This document shows, in pieces, positions 1-20,089 of a stretch of DNA of 21,039 bases. Source of the stretch: Wallemia ichthyophaga EXF-994 (Eukaryota; Fungi; Basidiomycota); contig NW_008806286.1 of NCBI RefSeq assembly GCF_000400465.1, forward strand, positions 2,762 to 23,800. The letters are read 5' to 3'. Below the pieces are notes generated by a model. That model searched no databases, had not been told where the DNA came from, and saw only the letters and a program-made list of their open reading frames with translations. Within the stretch, counting starts at the first letter, position 1, and every line of letters starts with the position of its first letter. The translations under genes and the position numbers were made by a program.

Positions 1-951
1 GTGCGTAGATTGAGAGGCTCACCCAGGCAGAGAGACTTGGACGGATGGATATTCGGAATGCCTCTTCGCTATGGAGGTCTGGGTCTACCCTCGCATGCAA
101 GCATCGCGCCCTTGGCCTACAGATCTATGGAGGAGGCAGCAGATCGGAAGCTGCAAGAGATTTTCCACCCGGATGCAATCGTGGATTATGATGATGCTCC
201 AGTACTCCAACGGCAGCGTACGAGTGCGTTCTTTGAGGCAGAATTCTCAAATACGTTTAGCACACTGTCGAGAGAGGAACAGAATATCATGTTGGACAAT
301 CAATCCAAGCTCGGTAGGAAGTGGATGACTACTCTACCCTTCAACAAGTCTCTCCGCTTCTCAGACAATGAGATTTCTTTCGCCCTTCACTCACGTACCT
401 TATGCCCAGGAAGCCAAGCTTTTTGCAAGTGCGGTTTGGAGAATGTAGTTGGTCATGACGACCTCTGCAATTCTCGTACTAATCTTCGCCTGGCACGGCA
501 CGAATTCATCAAGCGTCTGCTGACTCGCTTCATTTCATCGGCTCCCAATAGCACAACCACCACTGAGCCGATGATCGAGGGGACTTCAGCACGAACGGAC
601 TTTCGTGTTTCAGGAATGGCTTCGAGCACGGGTGGCTCCTCGGAGTATGATTTGGCTATCATAGCTCCGACTGCAAGTGTCAAGGCTGCGCGTGGTGAGG
701 TGGAAAACAAATGTGCTGAGGACAGGTACAAGGCAGAGTTGGCTTTTTATGAAAGGGAGAAGGTAAATAGGTACTCACACAGGACGTCATCACCTTTCGT
801 TCCCCTGATTATGTCCAGTGGTGGCTACCTTACAGACACAGCTAAGGATGTCTTCAAGCGTTGGCGGATGGTAATTCCTCATTACGAGATGCTGACTCGG
901 CTTATTTCACTCGGGCTCATAAGATCTCGGGCGGCTTATTTCGAGTTCTAG
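1..951 (+). CDS. Retrotransposon ORF, C-terminal 316 aa (RT thumb, zinc knuckle, restriction-like endonuclease); 5'-partial
   Basis: The frame is open from base 1 to TAG at 949-951 with no stops or frameshifts. Motifs as listed for the element. Confidence 0.85.
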   Translation: MRRLRGSPRQRDLDGWIFGMPLRYGGLGLPSHASIAPLAYRSMEEAADRKLQEIFHPDAIVDYDDAPVLQRQRTSAFFEAEFSNTFSTLSREEQNIMLDNQSKLGRKWMTTLPFNKSLRFSDNEISFALHSRTLCPGSQAFCKCGLENVVGHDDLCNSRTNLRLARHEFIKRLLTRFISSAPNSTTTTEPMIEGTSARTDFRVSGMASSTGGSSEYDLAIIAPTASVKAARGEVENKCAEDRYKAELAFYEREKVNRYSHRTSSPFVPLIMSSGGYLTDTAKDVFKRWRMVIPHYEMLTRLISLGLIRSRAAYFEF

Positions 952-1022
952 GCGCATCAAGTTTAGTGACGGTATCGTGAACTTTTTACTTTTCTACTTT
1001 AAAATATTTTAGAAATAAGACA

Positions 1023-1050
1023 AATTGTATCGACAATAATTAAATGCTTG
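1023..1050 (+). repeat. 28-bp direct repeat, copy 1 (AATTGTATCGACAATAATTAAATGCTTG)
   Basis: Exact match to 1335-1362. Contains the small hairpin ATTGT-ATCG-ACAAT at 1024-1037. Confidence 0.95.
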
Positions 1051-1057
1051 CTAACCT

Positions 1058-1373
1058 GAGGAGCTCAGCTTTTATGAGCGAGAAAAGTACAATCGTTACC
1101 AAGGTAAGACGGATACACCGTTTGTGCCATTGTTGATCACTGCCGGTGGTTATCTTACGGATACTTCGCGCGATGTCTTCAAGAAGTGGCGTCAGGTAGT
1201 TCCGCACTTTGAGATGCTATCTCGAACTATCTCACTCGGGCTTATTCGTGCTAGGGCAGCCTATTTCGAATTCTAGACAACGATTACATCAAGAAATTAT
1301 TATTTTTAACTTTTTATTTTTAAAGATTTTTGGTAATTGTATCGACAATAATTAAATGCTTGTTCACCTAACC
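1058..1373 (+). mobile_element. 5'-truncated second copy (diverged subfamily) of the same RLE retrotransposon
   Basis: 1058-1276 translates without stops to EELSFYEREKYNRYQGKTDTPFVPLLITAGGYLTDTSRDVFKKWRQVVPHFEMLSRTISLGLIRARAAYFEF*. This is 51/72 aa identical to the end of ORF 1..951 by hand count. A homologous T-rich UTR and the same 28-bp motif follow. It is absent from the ORF track because it has no start codon at its 5' end. Confidence 0.9.
1335..1362 (+). repeat. 28-bp direct repeat, copy 2
   Basis: Exact match to 1023-1050. Confidence 0.95.
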
Positions 1374-1797
1374 AGATACTTCGCCGCACATTCACACCGC
1401 CCTGCCGGCTTAGCCTCCGATGCTTCACACGGCACACATATAAAAGCCTCACTACTTTTCTATTGTATCTTAACGAATTACATTCACTTCTATCTATCTG
1501 TTTAGCTGTGTACAAAGCCATTCCTCATAGCCTAAGCTAAGACAAGCCCAAACCTTAACACTAAAAGCGAAACAATCGTCGAATTGTTTATCCGCTGCCG
1601 GAATTGGAAGACTTTTTAATAGCCGAACTAATTATGTGGAGAGAATTGCAAAAACAAGGCGTTTATGACCACAGAGGATACTGATTGAGGTCTTGTCAGG
1701 TTCAGGTTGGAGGTCAGCGGTCAACTACGACTCAATAATGCTTTTGAAATCCATGCAATGTACAAGATAATTGGTATAGCAAAAATAAATAAATAAA

Positions 1798-3842
1798 TCA
1801 AAGGCTATCATTCGCTAGCTTCATTGATTTTAGTGTAGAAATCTCGCTCGCGGTTAGTTTCCAATAATTTCTTGAGGTGCTACTTCCTTGCTCATTAAGA
1901 ACGGAGCTTATTTGTCTTATGCGACTAAACAGCTCTCTGATTCCTACGTTCGACAATCCACTGAGATAACCAAGCAGGTCATAGACATCCTTCTCGAATT
2001 GGATTGCACCGCTAACGCTGAATTTTAAAGTGTGAGAATTCAATACGAAGTTCTCCCATAGCTGGATCAGATGCGTCGTTGACTTGATAAACACCTCGTC
2101 AAAATTGTTCGCAGTGAGGCTATTATTCCATTTATCGAACACGGCACTCCACTCGCGCTCAAACATTGTCACAAACACTTTAGATTGTGCGTCAGCGTTC
2201 TTGTCATAATTAGTCACGTCCATTGAGGTTTTGAGGCAGTCTTTGATGGGGTTTTTGAATGTGGTTGCAAAAAGTGTGTTGAGGCAGCTCTTGATAATTT
2301 AAAGTTAGCAAGTCGAAGAGGATGGAAGGAAATCATAATACCCACAGTCAAACTGGTTTGAACGTGGTCGGATATCTCTTTTAGCCGGAGGAGTTGATCT
2401 TTGACTGGGGCAATATTCTCAGGGTCGTAAAACCGGTGTAGATTGCTATCCTTGGGTAAATCCGACAGTATGCGCATGTTATACTCGGAGCATATGTCCA
2501 AGTTGTTCAGACACACCGCAATTTTCAGCGCCTTGCTACGACTGCCAGCAGTGCTACCGCCAACTTTCGACTGCTGTGCTATCATCTTGCTTGTACGGGG
2601 CTTGATGTTGTTGTCAAAATCCATCTGCATCTTTTCGATGAAAGACTGCTGGAAGACCCTGATAATGCCATCGACTGCATTCTTCAGCACAGATACATCT
2701 CCACATCCTACCAGTCTATCAAGTAATCCTTTGTAAATGTAAAAAGTGTCTTCAAGGATAGAGGACGTATAAGGAAGAGCATCTTCGTCTATCTCATTAG
2801 CTTCTAGAGCTTCTTTCATGGTGGACTTAAAGTGTGCCATCTCTAAAGGAATATAGGTATCATTAATGTGTTGTCGGAGTAGGTGGGCAGTGGTGGATGA
2901 GCTGAGAATATGTTTCATAGAATCGTCTGTATTCAAATTTGACATGATAAATAGCTTGAACGCAGCCCAGTGTGAAGCTAAACCTGAGAGTTGAGATATT
3001 TCCGTATTGATATGCTTCAATTCGCCATTTTCTAAGGTAGACAAGTTGCGAGTCCAATTAAGAAAGATGACGTTGGCTTTGTCATCCAGTTCAGCCAGCA
3101 GACTGTGCAGCACAGTCACCATATACTCGCTTCCGTAATACTTGTGCACAACTGGCTGGTGATCTTCCAATACACTCGCTATGCTGTCGAGGAGCGCTCT
3201 GAGACTGTCGAGACTATCCATGCCACCCTTAAACTTGCGCTGAATCAGCTTGACTACGAAATATGAATAGGCAGTTATACCATCCTGCTTGCGGTTAATT
3301 TTTGGGAAAAGTTTGAAAAAGCGCGATATCTCAGCCTGGTCTAGTGACTGGCTGGCTTGGTTGAAGTGAGAGATGAAGATTTCGTTTAGGGTGTCTAGAC
3401 TGTTGTCCAATCGCTGCAGCGGTGGTTCTGGGTGGTGGGTTGAAGGAACGACCGTATCTGCGAATTGGCTGGTGATTATTGAGTGGGGTATGTTCAGCGC
3501 TCTCTGTGCATATAAGCTGGCCTGGTCATAGTCACGCTCATCGATTGCCATATCGAGTAAGCGCAACGAGGATTGCAGGAGCTCAGTCTTCCTGACCATG
3601 TCGAGACTAGCGCTGAGACGTTGCTGCTGCGTATCAAGTGCACTCAATGTTCCGTGGAAGCCCTCTGCGTACATCAACTTCCCACTTAGGCTCCGTCTAA
3701 ACGCAGTGAGCTGATTCGACAACCTATCTAAATCGCCCAAATCAAGCTGGCTGTACGAGCTGGATTGCATGGCTATCAGATTATCCAAAGACACTTCAGC
3801 GTCTTCCAGTGAATTTAATTTATTTTTAATTTCTATTTCCAT
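1798..3842 (-). CDS. COG4: Conserved oligomeric Golgi complex subunit 4; exons 3842-2346 and 2289-1798, about 662 aa
   Basis: A long helical protein with COG4-like segments (EISRFFKLFPKI...GITAYSYFV; SVSGAIQFEKDV...RELFSRIRQIS; WKLTASEI). A phase-0 intron at 2345-2290 (GTGGGT...GCTAAC...AAG) joins the two ORFs. The start was placed at MEIEIK rather than the upstream ATG at 3917, which overlaps CHS7. Confidence 0.85.
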
Positions 3843-4950: not shown

Positions 4951-5779
4951 CTAACTACTTAATATCAATAGCAAATTTTTCATGTTAGCGAGTATGTGAC
5001 CTAGTTCGGGTAGTGGTAGGTCGTAAGATAGCATGAGCTGTGTGTGCAGTGTGAGTGATGTGTTGCAAGCTGAGTAAAAGCCCACGCACAACTTGAATAT
5101 TCTTGTTGAATAGGTATATAGCATATTCGAGTCTATATCGATGATCATTTTTGAGGTTATAGTGGAGTGGGAAAGAGTTGTTGCCTCTTATGTTGGATAT
5201 ACTGTCTATAATGTAGGAGTGGCTGCCTTTATACACGATTTGGTAGGGGAGGTGGATGTTGAGGTAGCTACTGAGGATTTGAGTAAGCAAAGAAGTGTAA
5301 CCTAATGCAGAACTGGATATTATGGGATTAGGGTTCTCTAATTCAAGCCCTAAGATTGAGAAAGTGAAAGAGTCGTCGGTATTCAAGATAGGAAAAAGTG
5401 AGATGAGGTGGTTGAGGAGATGAGAACGGGCAGCTTTTGGTGACAGGTGATTGATTTTTTGTGAGGGAGTGTCCTTGGGTATACTTTGACTATTTTCAGC
5501 TTCCTGAAGAGCACACAAATGACGTCTTCTCTTAATGAGACTTGTACGTCTTCTTTGGATAGAATTTGAGAGATCAGAAGATCTTTCTTGAAGCTGTTTG
5601 ATATTACTATTCAAAACAGATGCCCTTCTATTCAAATCATCGAGATGTCTATTGTATTTCAAGTGTCTGGTGTTAGTTGAGATTCTATTGTCGATCTCAG
5701 CCACCTCAATTGAAAGCTCGTAGTTGCAATTTAATAGAGTAGACAGTCTGACAATTTGGTCAAAGTTTTCAGATGACAT
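4951..5779 (-). CDS. UVRAG/Vps38-like (Atg14 family) PI3K complex subunit; exons 5779-5090 and 5037-4951; 5' end uncertain
   Basis: A coiled coil is followed by FSILGLEL, SALGYTSLL...LPYQIVYKGSHSYIID, FPL...RLEYAIYLFNKNIQ, and a last exon LGHILANMKNLL after a 52-nt intron (5089-5038). Upstream exons in 5800-6210 are possible but I could not resolve them. Confidence 0.75.
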
Positions 5780-6283
5780 TTGCCTTGTATTATCGTTATT
5801 GCGTTATCGCTTGTTGGAAGTGTTAATGAGCGGGTATCTTGATAGACTTGGAGAATCAAAATCAGTGAGTGGATACCGTTGGGTTTCTTATTCTAATCCG
5901 GGCTAGAACATAAAGTATAGAAACCTTATTTACTCTGTTTCGACAAGTGTGATAGTGAGTAAGTGGCAATGTATGGGAAGTTAAGTGGAATGTTAAGGGT
6001 AGAGACAGCATCTTTAACATCCAAGTTGACAAACTTCAAGCCAAATCATCTCTCGCTCGTTGCGATATCTACGTTCGCAGCCACGTCATATTTAAACTCA
6101 GTGGCTGAATTAAGGGGGGAGATGGAAAAGGATAAAAACAGATAGCCTAGACTCACTTTATTTAACCAAATAATTTTATAAACTTGATTTTTTATTTTAC
6201 ATTCCATTTTCGTCCGATTGATAAATCCGATAATTTTTGATAATTTTTTGATAAAGATCGCGCGTTTTTGGGAGTGATCAGCC

Positions 6284-20009: not shown

Positions 20010-20089
20010 TGCATCAACCGGGAATCGAACCCGGGGCCGATCAAGTTTCCTAGTGGGAACGATCGAGGTTACCACTACCCCATCAATGC
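20010..20089 (-). tRNA. tRNA-Gly(CCC) with a 9-nt intron (20053-20045)
   Basis: Cloverleaf: acceptor GCATTGA/TTGATGC, D stem GGGT/ACCT, anticodon stem GATCG/TGATC with loop TT-CCC-A[CTAGGAAAC]T, and T arm CCGGG-TTCGATT-CCCGG. The mature length is 71 nt. Confidence 0.92.

What the first reader, a model, noticed from the sequence alone, without database searches (positions are those of the whole stretch)
1..1373. Head-to-tail array of two RLE retrotransposon subfamilies ending in an identical 28-bp sequence: possible new site-specific element
Seen: an open CRE-like RLE ORF, then a 5'-truncated sister copy directly behind it. Their UTRs are only patchily similar, yet both end in the identical 28-mer AATTGTATCGACAATAATTAAATGCTTG, which flanks the truncated copy on both sides. 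Known: RLE elements are often sequence-specific, and CRE-clade elements of trypanosomatids make target-site duplications tens of bp long. Inference: the 28-mer is either a long target-site duplication at a fixed target used repeatedly, or a conserved 3' RNA signal for the RT (it contains the hairpin ATTGT-ATCG-ACAAT). I do not recognise it as any known target such as rDNA, snRNA or tRNA.
Basis: partly seen in the sequence, partly recalled or inferred. Interest (0 to 1): 0.7.

Follow-up and report, generated by a model that had tools for sequence, protein, structure and literature searches.

The report
Telomere-targeting retrotransposon array in Wallemia
The repeat is real, but the shared 28 bases are the conserved tail of two related jumping genes stacked at a chromosome end of the salt-loving fungus Wallemia ichthyophaga, each joined to a few telomere repeats, so this is a new member of a known kind of telomere-targeting retrotransposon.

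Summary
An open 316-codon reading frame (1-951) is followed by a 5'-truncated sister copy (1060-1362). Both end in the same 28-mer (1023-1050 and 1335-1362).

The window is Wallemia ichthyophaga EXF-994 scaffold KE007236.1 from position 2762. It lies beside the COG4 gene, which sits next to a true telomere in W. hederae.

About ten junctions from five W. ichthyophaga assemblies and one sequencing-run assembly share one layout. An intact 3' UTR comes first, then usually (T)TTCA, then 5-15 nt of C-strand telomere repeat (CCTAA/CCCTAA). After that comes either a differently truncated copy or unique DNA. Two further subfamilies lack the 28-mer but have the same layout. The 28-mer is therefore the element's conserved 3' end, not a target or a target-site duplication. 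The target is the telomere or chromosome end.

The protein belongs to the R2 superfamily: zinc fingers, reverse transcriptase, CCHC motif and a restriction-like endonuclease (RLE). Its nearest named relative is a Cryptococcus neoformans protein, presumably Cnl1. The nearest metagenome relatives are also flanked by C-strand telomere repeats (9 of 14 loci against 0 of 66).

The proposed hairpin has no support. Verdict: a new member of the Cnl1/MoTeR/FoTeR kind, of moderate interest.

The parts
1..951 (+). C-terminal 316 codons plus stop of the subfamily-1 element ORF; it is cut at the window start by a scaffold gap. It holds the GGLG linker (aa 24-29), the CCHC motif (C142, C144, H152, C156 = nt 424-468) and the RLE motifs (R166-H167, E189-P190, D200, D217, K254, G274-G275 = nt 496-825).
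   Evidence: Open frame. These residues are invariant or nearly so in relatives. A profile of the domain matches the CCHC+RLE region of Bombyx R2 (8gh6_A residues 932-1018), with the motifs aligned. It is 58% identical to the W. ichthyophaga RT-bearing protein P0175 and 31% identical to a C. neoformans protein.
952..1050 (+). 3' UTR of the subfamily-1 copy; no poly(A) tail.
   Evidence: 98% identical over 112 nt to the same UTR in another strain (L009 1-112), where it sits beside a different subfamily.
1023..1050 (+). 28-mer, copy 1: the conserved 3'-terminal segment of the UTR.
1051..1059 (+). Junction: CTAACC (one C-strand telomere unit) plus 3 nt of filler, TGA. The usual TTCA is missing here.
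   Evidence: Sequence. Homology of the next copy starts at 1060.
1060..1276 (+). 5'-truncated subfamily-2 copy: the last ~72 codons of the ORF plus the stop at 1274-1276.
   Evidence: Translation. 99.7% identical to the two subfamily-2 copies upstream of the scaffold gap. Identical to the C-terminus of P0175/P0001.
1277..1362 (+). 3' UTR of the subfamily-2 copy.
1335..1362 (+). 28-mer, copy 2.
1363..1373 (+). TTCA (conserved end of the element) followed by CCTAACC (1.4 telomere units). This is the boundary between the array and unique chromosomal DNA.
   Evidence: The same TTCA+CCTAACC follows the 28-mer in L001, L008 and L009. TTTCA+CCTAA... follows other subfamilies in L004, L002 and L003. 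CCTAACC and TTCACCTAA each occur only here in the 21-kb window.
1374..1556 (.). Strain-specific stretch next to the array. It is absent from strain GCA_004918335.1, whose array joins the chromosome at a different point.
   Evidence: Homology to L004 starts at window 1557. The L004 junction reads TTTCA CCTAACCCTAAC + 24 nt + ACTAAAAGCG.
1798..3770 (-). COG4 gene, the first conserved gene inside the array. It serves as the synteny anchor to the W. hederae telomere.
   Evidence: Pfam COG4_m and COG4_N. Gene model in L001. Orthologous contigs.

Best explanation
Window 1-1373 is the inner end of a head-to-tail array of telomere-associated non-LTR retrotransposons at a chromosome end of Wallemia ichthyophaga. 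Each element encodes one protein of the R2 superfamily: N-terminal zinc fingers, reverse transcriptase, a CCHC motif and a restriction-like endonuclease.

Inferred mechanism, by analogy with R2, SART1 and MoTeR:
- The protein binds the 3' end of its own RNA, and the 28-mer is the terminal part of that recognition region.
- The RNA ends in ...TTCA, probably followed by one to three CCUAA units.
- That tail pairs with the G-rich telomere strand (TTAGG/TTAGGG) at a chromosome end or at a nick made by the endonuclease.
- The 3'-OH of the telomere strand primes reverse transcription.
- Incomplete copying gives 5'-truncated copies.
- New repeats or new elements are then added distally. Copies therefore stack with their 3' ends towards the centromere, separated by a few telomere repeats and without target-site duplications.

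The 28-mer is identical in two subfamilies whose synonymous sites are saturated. It is therefore under strong constraint, most likely as the RNA signal used by both reverse transcriptases.

What is shown: the anatomy, the location at a chromosome end, strain polymorphism, recent copies, homology, and the same layout in relatives. What is inferred: RNA binding by the protein, priming on the telomere strand, and the role of the endonuclease.
For: 1. Identity and location. The window equals KE007236.1 from position 2762. In W. hederae the COG4 neighbourhood ends in a true terminal telomere, CCTAACCCCTAACCCTAACCCTAACCTAACCCCCTAA....

2. Junctions. About ten junctions read [intact 3' UTR]-(T)TTCA-(CCTAA/CCCTAA, 5-15 nt)-[truncated copy or unique DNA]: window 1051 and 1363; L001 601 and 1321; L004/L002; L008 (two); L009; L003 (two).

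3. Independent insertions. There are at least five different 5' truncation points.

4. Strain polymorphism. The same chromosome end in another strain carries a different subfamily joined at a different point.

5. Recent activity. Subfamily-2 copies are 99.7% identical to one another.

6. Constraint. dN/dS is 0.16 and pS is 0.71 between subfamilies 1 and 2, against 28/28 identity in the UTR end.

7. Protein. There are 648 relatives. The full-length ones carry RVT_1 plus this C-terminal domain. The best matches among solved structures are R2 proteins (E = 3e-29), with the CCHC+RLE region aligned separately.

8. Relatives. A C. neoformans protein is 31% identical (E = 7e-39). Nine of the 14 closest metagenome loci have C-strand telomere repeats on the sense strand next to the 3' UTR, against 0 of 66 more distant ones (Fisher p = 9e-9), and none has G-strand repeats. 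They include telomere + full-length copy (L023) and UTR + 2-3 repeats + truncated copy (L019, L020).

9. Tree. The Wallemia subfamilies, the Cryptococcus protein and all telomere-flanked elements form one neighbour-joining (NJ) cluster with 77.5% bootstrap support.

10. Literature. MoTeR, FoTeR and Cnl1 have the same layout (PMC8381367, PMC12857005, PMC12810828, bioRxiv 10.1101/2021.08.11.455996).
Against: - No full-length Wallemia copy or 5' end was seen. The array is interrupted by a 1.4-kb run of N and its distal telomere is not assembled.
- The telomere of W. ichthyophaga itself was not observed; its repeat is inferred from W. hederae and from the tracts between copies.
- I could not search a whole Wallemia assembly for the 28-mer, so copies outside chromosome ends are not excluded.
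- The telomere tracts are very short (7-12 nt at the three boundaries with unique DNA). They could be templated by the element RNA rather than be remains of a telomere.
- One junction (window 1051) lacks TTCA.
- No structure or covariation supports an RNA fold in the 28-mer.
- Placement relative to named references (CRE, SLACS, MoTeR1, Repbase Cnl1) was not computed here.
- That P0017 is Cnl1 is my inference.
Confidence: 0.85

Rival explanations
1. The 28-mer is a long target-site duplication of a fixed genomic target that the element uses repeatedly.
For: The 28-mer literally flanks the truncated copy on both sides. From my own knowledge, trypanosomatid CRE/SLACS elements make long duplications.
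Against: - In every copy the 28-mer continues a subfamily-specific UTR.
- What follows it is telomere repeat, not a constant target flank.
- Sister subfamilies 3a, 3b and 4 have the same junctions without the 28-mer.
- The element-free homologous chromosome end in W. hederae has a telomere and no 28-mer.
- No Rfam family or tRNA overlaps it.
Confidence: 0.03
2. The tandem layout is an assembly artefact or a local segmental duplication or unequal crossover, not repeated retrotransposition.
For: The scaffold has a 1.4-kb N gap inside the array. Arrays of this kind (Cnl1) are known to expand and contract by recombination (bioRxiv 10.1101/2021.08.11.455996).
Against: - The neighbouring copies belong to different subfamilies (66% nucleotide identity) and have different truncation points.
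- The same kind of junction recurs in independent assemblies of at least five strains, with different partners: sub1-sub2, sub2-sub2, sub2-sub3b and sub1-sub3b.
Confidence: 0.05
3. The two subfamilies share the 28-mer because one recently acquired the other's 3' end by template switching or recombination, not because of long-term selection on an RNA signal.
For: The identity block has a sharp 5' edge: the four bases ahead of it differ and the rest of the UTR is 51% identical. Both subfamilies live in the same arrays, so hybrid cDNAs are plausible.
Against: - The 28-mer is fixed in both subfamilies across strains and beside different neighbours (L008, L009, L001).
- A core, A-TTGT, at the same distance from the end, and the terminal (T)TTCA, are kept in all four Wallemia subfamilies. 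This points to constraint.
- Even an exchanged end would have to work with the recipient's reverse transcriptase.
Confidence: 0.2
4. The elements do not need telomere repeats as a target. Their RNA carries its own short telomere-like tail (UUCACCUAACC), and they are added to any free or broken DNA end, healing it as Drosophila HeT-A does.
For: - All three boundaries with unique DNA have only 7-12 nt of repeat (window 1367-1373, L004, L003), and copy-to-copy tracts are 5-15 nt, whereas the plain W. hederae telomere is at least 55 nt.
- The two W. ichthyophaga strains have different end points on the same chromosome arm.
Against: - The tracts vary in length and in unit (CCTAA against CCCTAA), as telomerase products do.
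- The endonuclease motifs are conserved under purifying selection, which suggests that cleavage of a target is still needed.
- Relatives such as L023 sit under long telomere tracts.
Confidence: 0.2

Closest known systems
Cnl1 of Cryptococcus neoformans/deneoformans (non-LTR, R2 superfamily; subtelomeric arrays)
   Same: - Basidiomycete host and a single ORF with RT and a C-terminal CCHC+RLE.
- Head-to-tail subtelomeric arrays with many 5'-truncated fragments.
- A C. neoformans protein (UOH81167.1, presumably Cnl1) is the closest named relative of the window ORF: 31% identity, E = 7e-39. It is itself a fusion of two truncated copies.
- Cnl1 duplications contain CACCCCT, which resembles the telomere seed (PMC12810828). 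The Wallemia junctions read TTCACCTAACC.
   Different: - Only about 31% identity; the Wallemia subfamilies form their own clade (98.5% bootstrap).
- The host telomere unit is different (CCTAA/CCCTAA).
- Cnl1 also inserts in genes, with duplications. No internal Wallemia copy has been seen, and none could be searched for.
MoTeR1/MoTeR2 of Pyricularia (Magnaporthe) oryzae
   Same: A conserved 3' terminus abuts C-strand telomere repeats (CGCGAATTAAAA+CCCTAA..., PMC8381367), and copies are separated by short telomere tracts. The arrays sit at chromosome ends, and the element is RLE-type.
   Different: Ascomycete host. The 3'-terminal sequence is unrelated. MoTeRs carry variant telomere-like repeats at the 5' end; the Wallemia 5' end is unknown. 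No direct sequence comparison was made here.
FoTeR of Fusarium oxysporum (PMC12857005)
   Same: Found exclusively at telomeres. The 3' ends are followed by telomere repeats, and truncated copies keep the repeat on the untruncated side. It is reported to lie in one clade with MoTeR1, Cnl1, SLACS, CRE1/2 and CZAR.
   Different: FoTeRs have 3-7 repeats at the 3' end and large 5' VNTRs. The Wallemia tracts are only 1-3 units, and no VNTR has been seen. The metagenome relative L014 does have one.
CRE1/CRE2/SLACS/CZAR of trypanosomatids
   Same: The same superfamily architecture (zinc finger, RT, CCHC, RLE), and strict site specificity.
   Different: Their target is the spliced-leader RNA gene, with a long target-site duplication. 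Here there is no spliced-leader gene and no duplication, and the target is the telomere.
R2 (solved structures 9nl3, 9dou, 8gh6, 8ibw)
   Same: R2 proteins are the best matches among solved structures for both the RT and the CCHC+RLE regions. From my own knowledge, R2 protein binds its own 3' UTR RNA and primes on the nicked target.
   Different: R2 targets 28S rDNA, and no rRNA is present here. Similarity is distant: E = 0.016 for the C-terminal profile alone.
SART1/TRAS1 of Bombyx and HeT-A/TART/TAHRE of Drosophila
   Same: They work alike. They insert into or attach to telomeres, and their arrays have 3' ends facing the centromere. From my own knowledge, SART1 needs its 3' UTR and a read-through telomere tail for a precise start.
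   Different: They belong to other clades (an APE endonuclease or none; poly(A) tails; two ORFs), so they are not relatives in the narrow sense.

Membership tests
R2-superfamily (RLE-bearing) non-LTR retrotransposons | C-terminal CCHC motif followed by a PD-(D/E)xK restriction-like endonuclease | tested here: met
   C142, C144, H152, C156, R166-H167, E189-P190, D200, D217 and K254 are present in the window ORF and conserved in relatives. Profiles align these motifs to the CCHC+RLE region of R2: 8gh6_A 932-1018 (E = 0.016) and 9nl3_A 980-1096 (domain E = 0.001). No Pfam model covers the domain. The structure prediction failed (pLDDT 34).
R2-superfamily (RLE-bearing) non-LTR retrotransposons | Single ORF with the reverse transcriptase upstream of the RLE and N-terminal zinc fingers | tested here: met
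   This part is not in the window, which is cut by the gap. It is shown in W. ichthyophaga P0175/P0021 (subfamily 2, whose C-terminus is identical to window copy 2) and in full-length relatives: RVT_1 hits, the alignment with N-terminal Cys/His motifs, and R2 as the best solved-structure match at E = 3e-29.
Telomere-targeted fungal elements (Cnl1 / MoTeR / FoTeR type) | Location at chromosome ends, in head-to-tail arrays with 3' ends towards the centromere | tested here: met
   The array lies at the start of the scaffold, pointing inward. The syntenic end in W. hederae is a terminal telomere. In all W. ichthyophaga assemblies seen, contigs break inside the element just beyond COG4.
Telomere-targeted fungal elements (Cnl1 / MoTeR / FoTeR type) | An intact 3' end directly followed by C-strand telomere repeats, 5' truncation of copies, and no poly(A) | tested here: met
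   About ten junctions; at least five truncation points; no A-run at any 3' end.
Telomere-targeted fungal elements (Cnl1 / MoTeR / FoTeR type) | Variant telomere-like repeats or VNTRs at the 5' end of full-length copies | not testable with these tools
   No full-length Wallemia copy is available. Contigs holding the N-terminal part (P0021, P0175) could not be fetched. Relatives L017, L023 and L014 do show such 5' repeats.
Telomere-targeted fungal elements (Cnl1 / MoTeR / FoTeR type) | Reverse transcriptase or RLE groups phylogenetically with Cnl1 and MoTeR1 | tested here: inconclusive
   The window ORF groups with a C. neoformans protein (presumed Cnl1) and with telomere-flanked metagenome elements. 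Bootstrap support is 77.5% for the wider cluster but only 32% for Wallemia+Cryptococcus+L011-13. No named MoTeR1, CRE or Repbase Cnl1 sequence was available for inclusion.
CRE clade in the strict sense (CRE1/2, SLACS, CZAR) | Insertion at a fixed site in spliced-leader RNA genes, with a long target-site duplication | tested here: not met
   No RNA gene lies at or near the junctions. The flanks are telomere repeats. The 28-mer is part of the element, not a duplication.
R2 proper | Insertion in 28S rDNA | tested here: not met
   The Rfam scan of the window found no rRNA. The neighbours are single-copy genes.

The most novel reading that the evidence does not exclude
In the very compact, repeat-poor genome of Wallemia ichthyophaga these elements may serve as an end-healing or back-up telomere system. 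Their RNA would carry its own one-to-three-unit telomere tail next to a conserved 3' signal (the 28-mer plus TTCA). They could then be added to critically short or freshly broken ends. This would explain the 7-12 nt tracts at every boundary with unique DNA and the strain-specific end points of this chromosome arm. The same conserved 3' end in two old subfamilies would then define the minimal RNA signal for end-directed reverse transcription in the Cnl1/MoTeR group, whose target rule is still called undefined (PMC12810828).
Probability: 0.15. Interest if true: 0.7.

Novelty: new member of a known kind. Interest (0 to 1): 0.45.

Why it matters
- It adds a third fungal class (Wallemiomycetes, an early-branching lineage of Agaricomycotina) to the hosts of telomere-targeting RLE retrotransposons. 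At least four co-resident subfamilies are polymorphic between strains.
- Metagenome relatives with the same layout show that telomere association is a clade-wide, probably ancient trait, not three separate curiosities.
- The sharply conserved 28-mer, the terminal TTCA and the very short telomere tracts give concrete, testable candidates for the RNA signal and the priming register of this group. For Cnl1 the target rule is still open.
- Practical points: these arrays explain why Wallemia scaffolds break at chromosome ends, and why genes such as J056_000982 are mis-annotated fusions of element fragments.

Tried and rejected
- Rfam and tRNA scans for a known RNA target at the junctions found nothing.
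- Pfam on the ORF gave no hit. A single-sequence search of solved structures found nothing meaningful; only profiles reached R2.
- RNA folds of five 3' UTRs were no more stable than shuffles. The hairpin had no compensatory changes and paired no better than slid controls.
- AlphaFold on a 7-row Wallemia-only alignment gave pLDDT 34. The model is unusable, so no fold search was run.
- The first metagenome scan, with the Wallemia-only profile, found no confirmed relative, and alignment A3 was too diverse to make patterns. The scan with full-length relatives worked.
- I tested whether window 1374-1556 is a decayed older element tail, prompted by a shared ATTGTATC. Local alignment was no better than shuffles, so I rejected the idea.
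- I looked for nucleotide self-similarity in L011 and L013 as evidence of same-family tandem copies. There was none, though L013 has a protein-level hit downstream.
- The 'CCTACCTA' in L025, L026 and L029 is not telomeric. These are degenerate internal relatives.
- Literature: no paper in the library holds both 'Wallemia' and 'non-LTR', and the papers holding 'Wallemia' and 'telomere' did not look relevant by title or abstract.
Full report
**1. Observation**

The 28-mer AATTGTATCGACAATAATTAAATGCTTG occurs exactly twice in the window, at 1023-1050 and 1335-1362 on the + strand. There are no near matches, and none in 100 shuffles. Frame 1 is open from base 1 to the stop at 949-951, giving 316 codons. 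A second, shorter remnant in frame 2 ends at 1274-1276 and is 71% identical in protein to the end of the first. Between the two copies the coding part is 66% identical in DNA, the UTR ahead of the 28-mer is 51% identical, and the 28-mer is 28/28 identical. Over 205 codons the two subfamilies have pS 0.71 (near saturation) and dN/dS 0.16. The identical 28 bases therefore cannot be left-over similarity.

**2. Where the window comes from**

Neighbouring ORFs are fungal housekeeping genes: COG4, Chs7, an ATG14/VPS38-like gene, a TBC RabGAP and PhzF. The closest relatives of the ORF are Wallemia ichthyophaga hypothetical proteins. Locus L001, the first 11.2 kb of W. ichthyophaga EXF-994 scaffold KE007236.1, contains the window from scaffold position 2762 onward, directly after a 1.4-kb run of N. 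Upstream of the gap lie two more copies of the second subfamily. The window thus shows only the inner end of a longer array at the start of a 337-kb scaffold.

**3. It is a chromosome end**

I fetched contigs carrying COG4 orthologues.
- In W. hederae the contig ends about 1.3 kb beyond COG4 in a terminal telomere, CCTAACCCCTAACCCTAACCCTAACCTAACCCCCTAACCTACCCCTAACCC... This is an irregular TTAG(2-5) repeat.
- In a second W. ichthyophaga strain (GCA_004918335.1) the contig breaks inside an element of a third subfamily. That element is joined to the chromosome as ...CGTTCG TTTCA CCTAACCCTAAC + 24 nt + ACTAAAAGCG. Homology to the window resumes only at window 1557.

The same arm therefore has a different element and a different end point in the two strains.

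**4. Junction anatomy**

Every readable junction has the same order: intact 3' UTR, usually (T)TTCA, 5-15 nt of C-strand telomere repeat, then either a 5'-truncated copy or unique DNA.

| Locus | 3' end | Linker and repeat | What follows |
|---|---|---|---|
| window 1051 | 28-mer | CTAACC + TGA | copy 2 |
| window 1363 | 28-mer | TTCA CCTAACC | unique DNA |
| L001 601 | 28-mer | TTCA CCTAACCTAAC(C) | copy truncated at ...LPYN |
| L001 1321 | 28-mer | TTCA CCTAA | N gap |
| L008 | subfamily-2 28-mer | TTCA CCTAACC | truncated subfamily-3b copy |
| L008 | 3b UTR ...GCATTTAGC | TTTC TAACCTAACCTAACC | other sequence |
| L009 | subfamily-1 UTR and 28-mer | TTCA CCTAACC | a longer 3b copy |
| L004/L002 | subfamily 3a | TTTCA CCTAACCCTAAC | unique DNA |
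| L003 | ...GTTTTAAT | CTAACCTAA | 37 nt of unidentified sequence, then a short 3'-terminal UTR remnant |
| L003 | ...AAGAG | TTTCA CCTAACC | unique DNA |

At least five different truncation points show separate insertion events. Subfamily-2 copies are 99.7% identical to one another, so they are recent. In the 21-kb window CCTAACC and TTCACCTAA each occur only at 1363-1373. No 3' end has a poly(A) run.

**5. What the 28-mer is**

It is always continuous with a subfamily-specific UTR. It is kept in subfamilies 1 and 2 across strains and beside different neighbours. It is replaced by other sequence in subfamilies 3a, 3b and 4, which still have the same junctions. Across all four subfamilies, only the core A-TTGT at a similar distance from the end and the terminal (T)TTCA are shared. 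The 28-mer is therefore the conserved 3'-terminal part of the element. It is not a target and not a target-site duplication.

The proposed hairpin is unsupported. It is absent from the minimum-energy folds, and the UTR folds have z-scores near zero. Across subfamilies it has no compensatory change, and it is paired in 63% of cells, which is no better than slid controls.

**6. The protein**

A profile search found 648 relatives. The full-length ones are 950-1300 aa, with N-terminal Cys/His fingers, RVT_1, a GGLG linker, a CCHC motif and the domain seen in the window. W. ichthyophaga itself has partial proteins of 836-911 aa (P0021, P0175) that carry the RT and end exactly like window copy 2.

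Invariant or near-invariant residues are C142, C144, H152, C156, R166-H167, E189-P190, D200 and D217, with K254 in most. A profile of the C-terminal domain has Bombyx R2 as its best match among solved structures, over its CCHC+RLE region and with the motifs aligned (E = 0.016). A profile of full-length relatives hits R2 proteins at E = 3e-29, ahead of LINE-1 ORF2 at 1e-15, with the RLE region matched separately. Structure prediction from the shallow Wallemia alignment failed.

**7. Relatives**

One relative is C. neoformans UOH81167.1 (31% identity, E = 7e-39). It is itself a fusion of two truncated copies. I take it to be Cnl1, the non-LTR element of that species. This is an inference from the literature, not a test.

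Eighty metagenome loci were fetched. Nine of the 14 closest have at least two C-strand telomere units on the sense strand, right after the 3' UTR or ahead of the element. None has G-strand repeats. None of the 66 more distant loci has either (Fisher p = 9e-9). Examples:
- L011: ...GATGCAGCAGAATCA|CCCCCTAACCCCTAA
- L017 and L020: ...GATGCTGCAGTAA|CCCTAACCCTAA...
- L023: a 67-nt telomere, then a UTR fragment, variant repeats and a full-length ORF
- L019 and L020: UTR, then 2-3 repeats, then a truncated copy

Several of these 3' ends share an ATGC some 9-12 nt ahead of the repeats, as the Wallemia 28-mer does (...AAATGCTTGTTCA). This is an observation only and was not tested.

In a neighbour-joining (NJ) tree of the C-terminal 330 aa, the Wallemia subfamilies form one clade (98.5% bootstrap). 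The cluster that holds Wallemia, the Cryptococcus protein and all telomere-flanked elements has 77.5% support.

**8. Mechanism**

The anatomy is what target-primed reverse transcription on the telomeric G strand predicts. The cDNA is attached to a ...TTAGG-3' end, so on the C strand the element reads 5' to 3' towards the centromere and is followed by CCTAA units. Failure to reach the 5' end gives truncated copies. Further additions stack distally.

By analogy with R2 and SART1 (my own knowledge) and with MoTeR and FoTeR (PMC8381367, PMC12857005), I propose that the protein recognises the 3' terminal region that includes the 28-mer. The TTCA(CCUAA)n tail would then set the register on the telomere strand.

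Shown: anatomy, location, polymorphism, recency and homology. Inferred: RNA binding, priming and the role of the endonuclease.

One detail remains open. The repeat tracts are very short (7-12 nt at the three boundaries with unique DNA), while the plain W. hederae telomere is at least 55 nt. The tract may therefore be templated by the element RNA, with attachment to very short or broken ends.

**9. Comparison and novelty**

The closest known systems are Cnl1, MoTeR and FoTeR. CRE/SLACS and R2 share the protein architecture but not the target. PMC12810828 reports that CNL1 is closest to MoTeR and that its target rule is undefined. PMC12857005 places MoTeR1, Cnl1, SLACS, CRE1/2 and CZAR in one clade. 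I found no paper linking Wallemia with non-LTR elements; Repbase could not be checked. I rate this a new member of a known kind, of moderate interest.

**10. Limits**

- No full-length Wallemia copy, 5' end or distal telomere was seen.
- No whole-assembly search for the 28-mer was possible.
- No named reference sequences were in the tree.
- The telomere repeat of W. ichthyophaga is inferred from W. hederae and from the tracts between copies.

Noticed in passing
L001 161-1245 (P0001, J056_000982) and P0017 (C. neoformans UOH81167.1): Both annotated 'hypothetical proteins' are gene models that fuse two 5'-truncated element copies. The 3' UTR plus telomere tract between the copies is read as an intron.
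   Followed up: partly
L006 13262-13316 (W. hederae SPNW01000069.1, contig start): The terminal telomere is irregular, mixing CCTAA, CCCTAA, CCCCTAA and CCCCCTAA units (TTAG2-5) rather than a uniform TTAGGG. The tracts between copies in W. ichthyophaga are mostly 5-nt CCTAA units.
   Followed up: partly
L005 5926-5945 (Logan SRR25399871, a Wallemia-like species with COG4 79% identical): An interstitial CTAACCTAACCTAACCCTAA lies 3.8 kb beyond COG4. It has the orientation of a left-end telomere, although in W. ichthyophaga and W. hederae the chromosome ends to that side. It may mark an old end-capture or fusion point at a synteny break.
   Followed up: no
window 1374-1556 against L004 12214-12237: The 183 nt between the array and the conserved DNA in EXF-994 are replaced by 24 unrelated nt in strain GCA_004918335.1. 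The origin of either stretch is unknown, and neither resembles element tails more than shuffles do.
   Followed up: partly
L014 13-2893 and 3290-3644: A metagenome relative has about 3 kb of nested tandem repeats (20-nt and 91-nt units) between a telomere repeat and its ORF, like the VNTRs reported upstream of FoTeRs.
   Followed up: partly
L017 1789-1983 and L023 222-290: Full-length relatives have variant telomere-like repeats (CCCTACCCCTA, CCGACCCGACCC) just upstream of the start codon, as described for MoTeR 5' ends.
   Followed up: no
L025, L026, L029 and L043 (JAABU... contigs up to 177 kb): Degenerate relatives (41-49% identity to P0011, broken ORFs) lie inside long contigs without telomere repeats. 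They may be internalised relics or a non-telomeric sister lineage.
   Followed up: partly
L008 1142-1306: After the telomere tract that follows the 3b copy comes 165 nt of open frame (SGGDIDSVKDVDAELTK...). It has no similarity to any fetched locus and could be unique subtelomeric DNA or an unknown part of an element.
   Followed up: partly
window 20010-20089 (-) and window 5001-6000: A tRNA-Trp (CCA) gene. Separately, there is an unusually high GC skew (+0.34) over the ATG14/VPS38-like gene.
   Followed up: no
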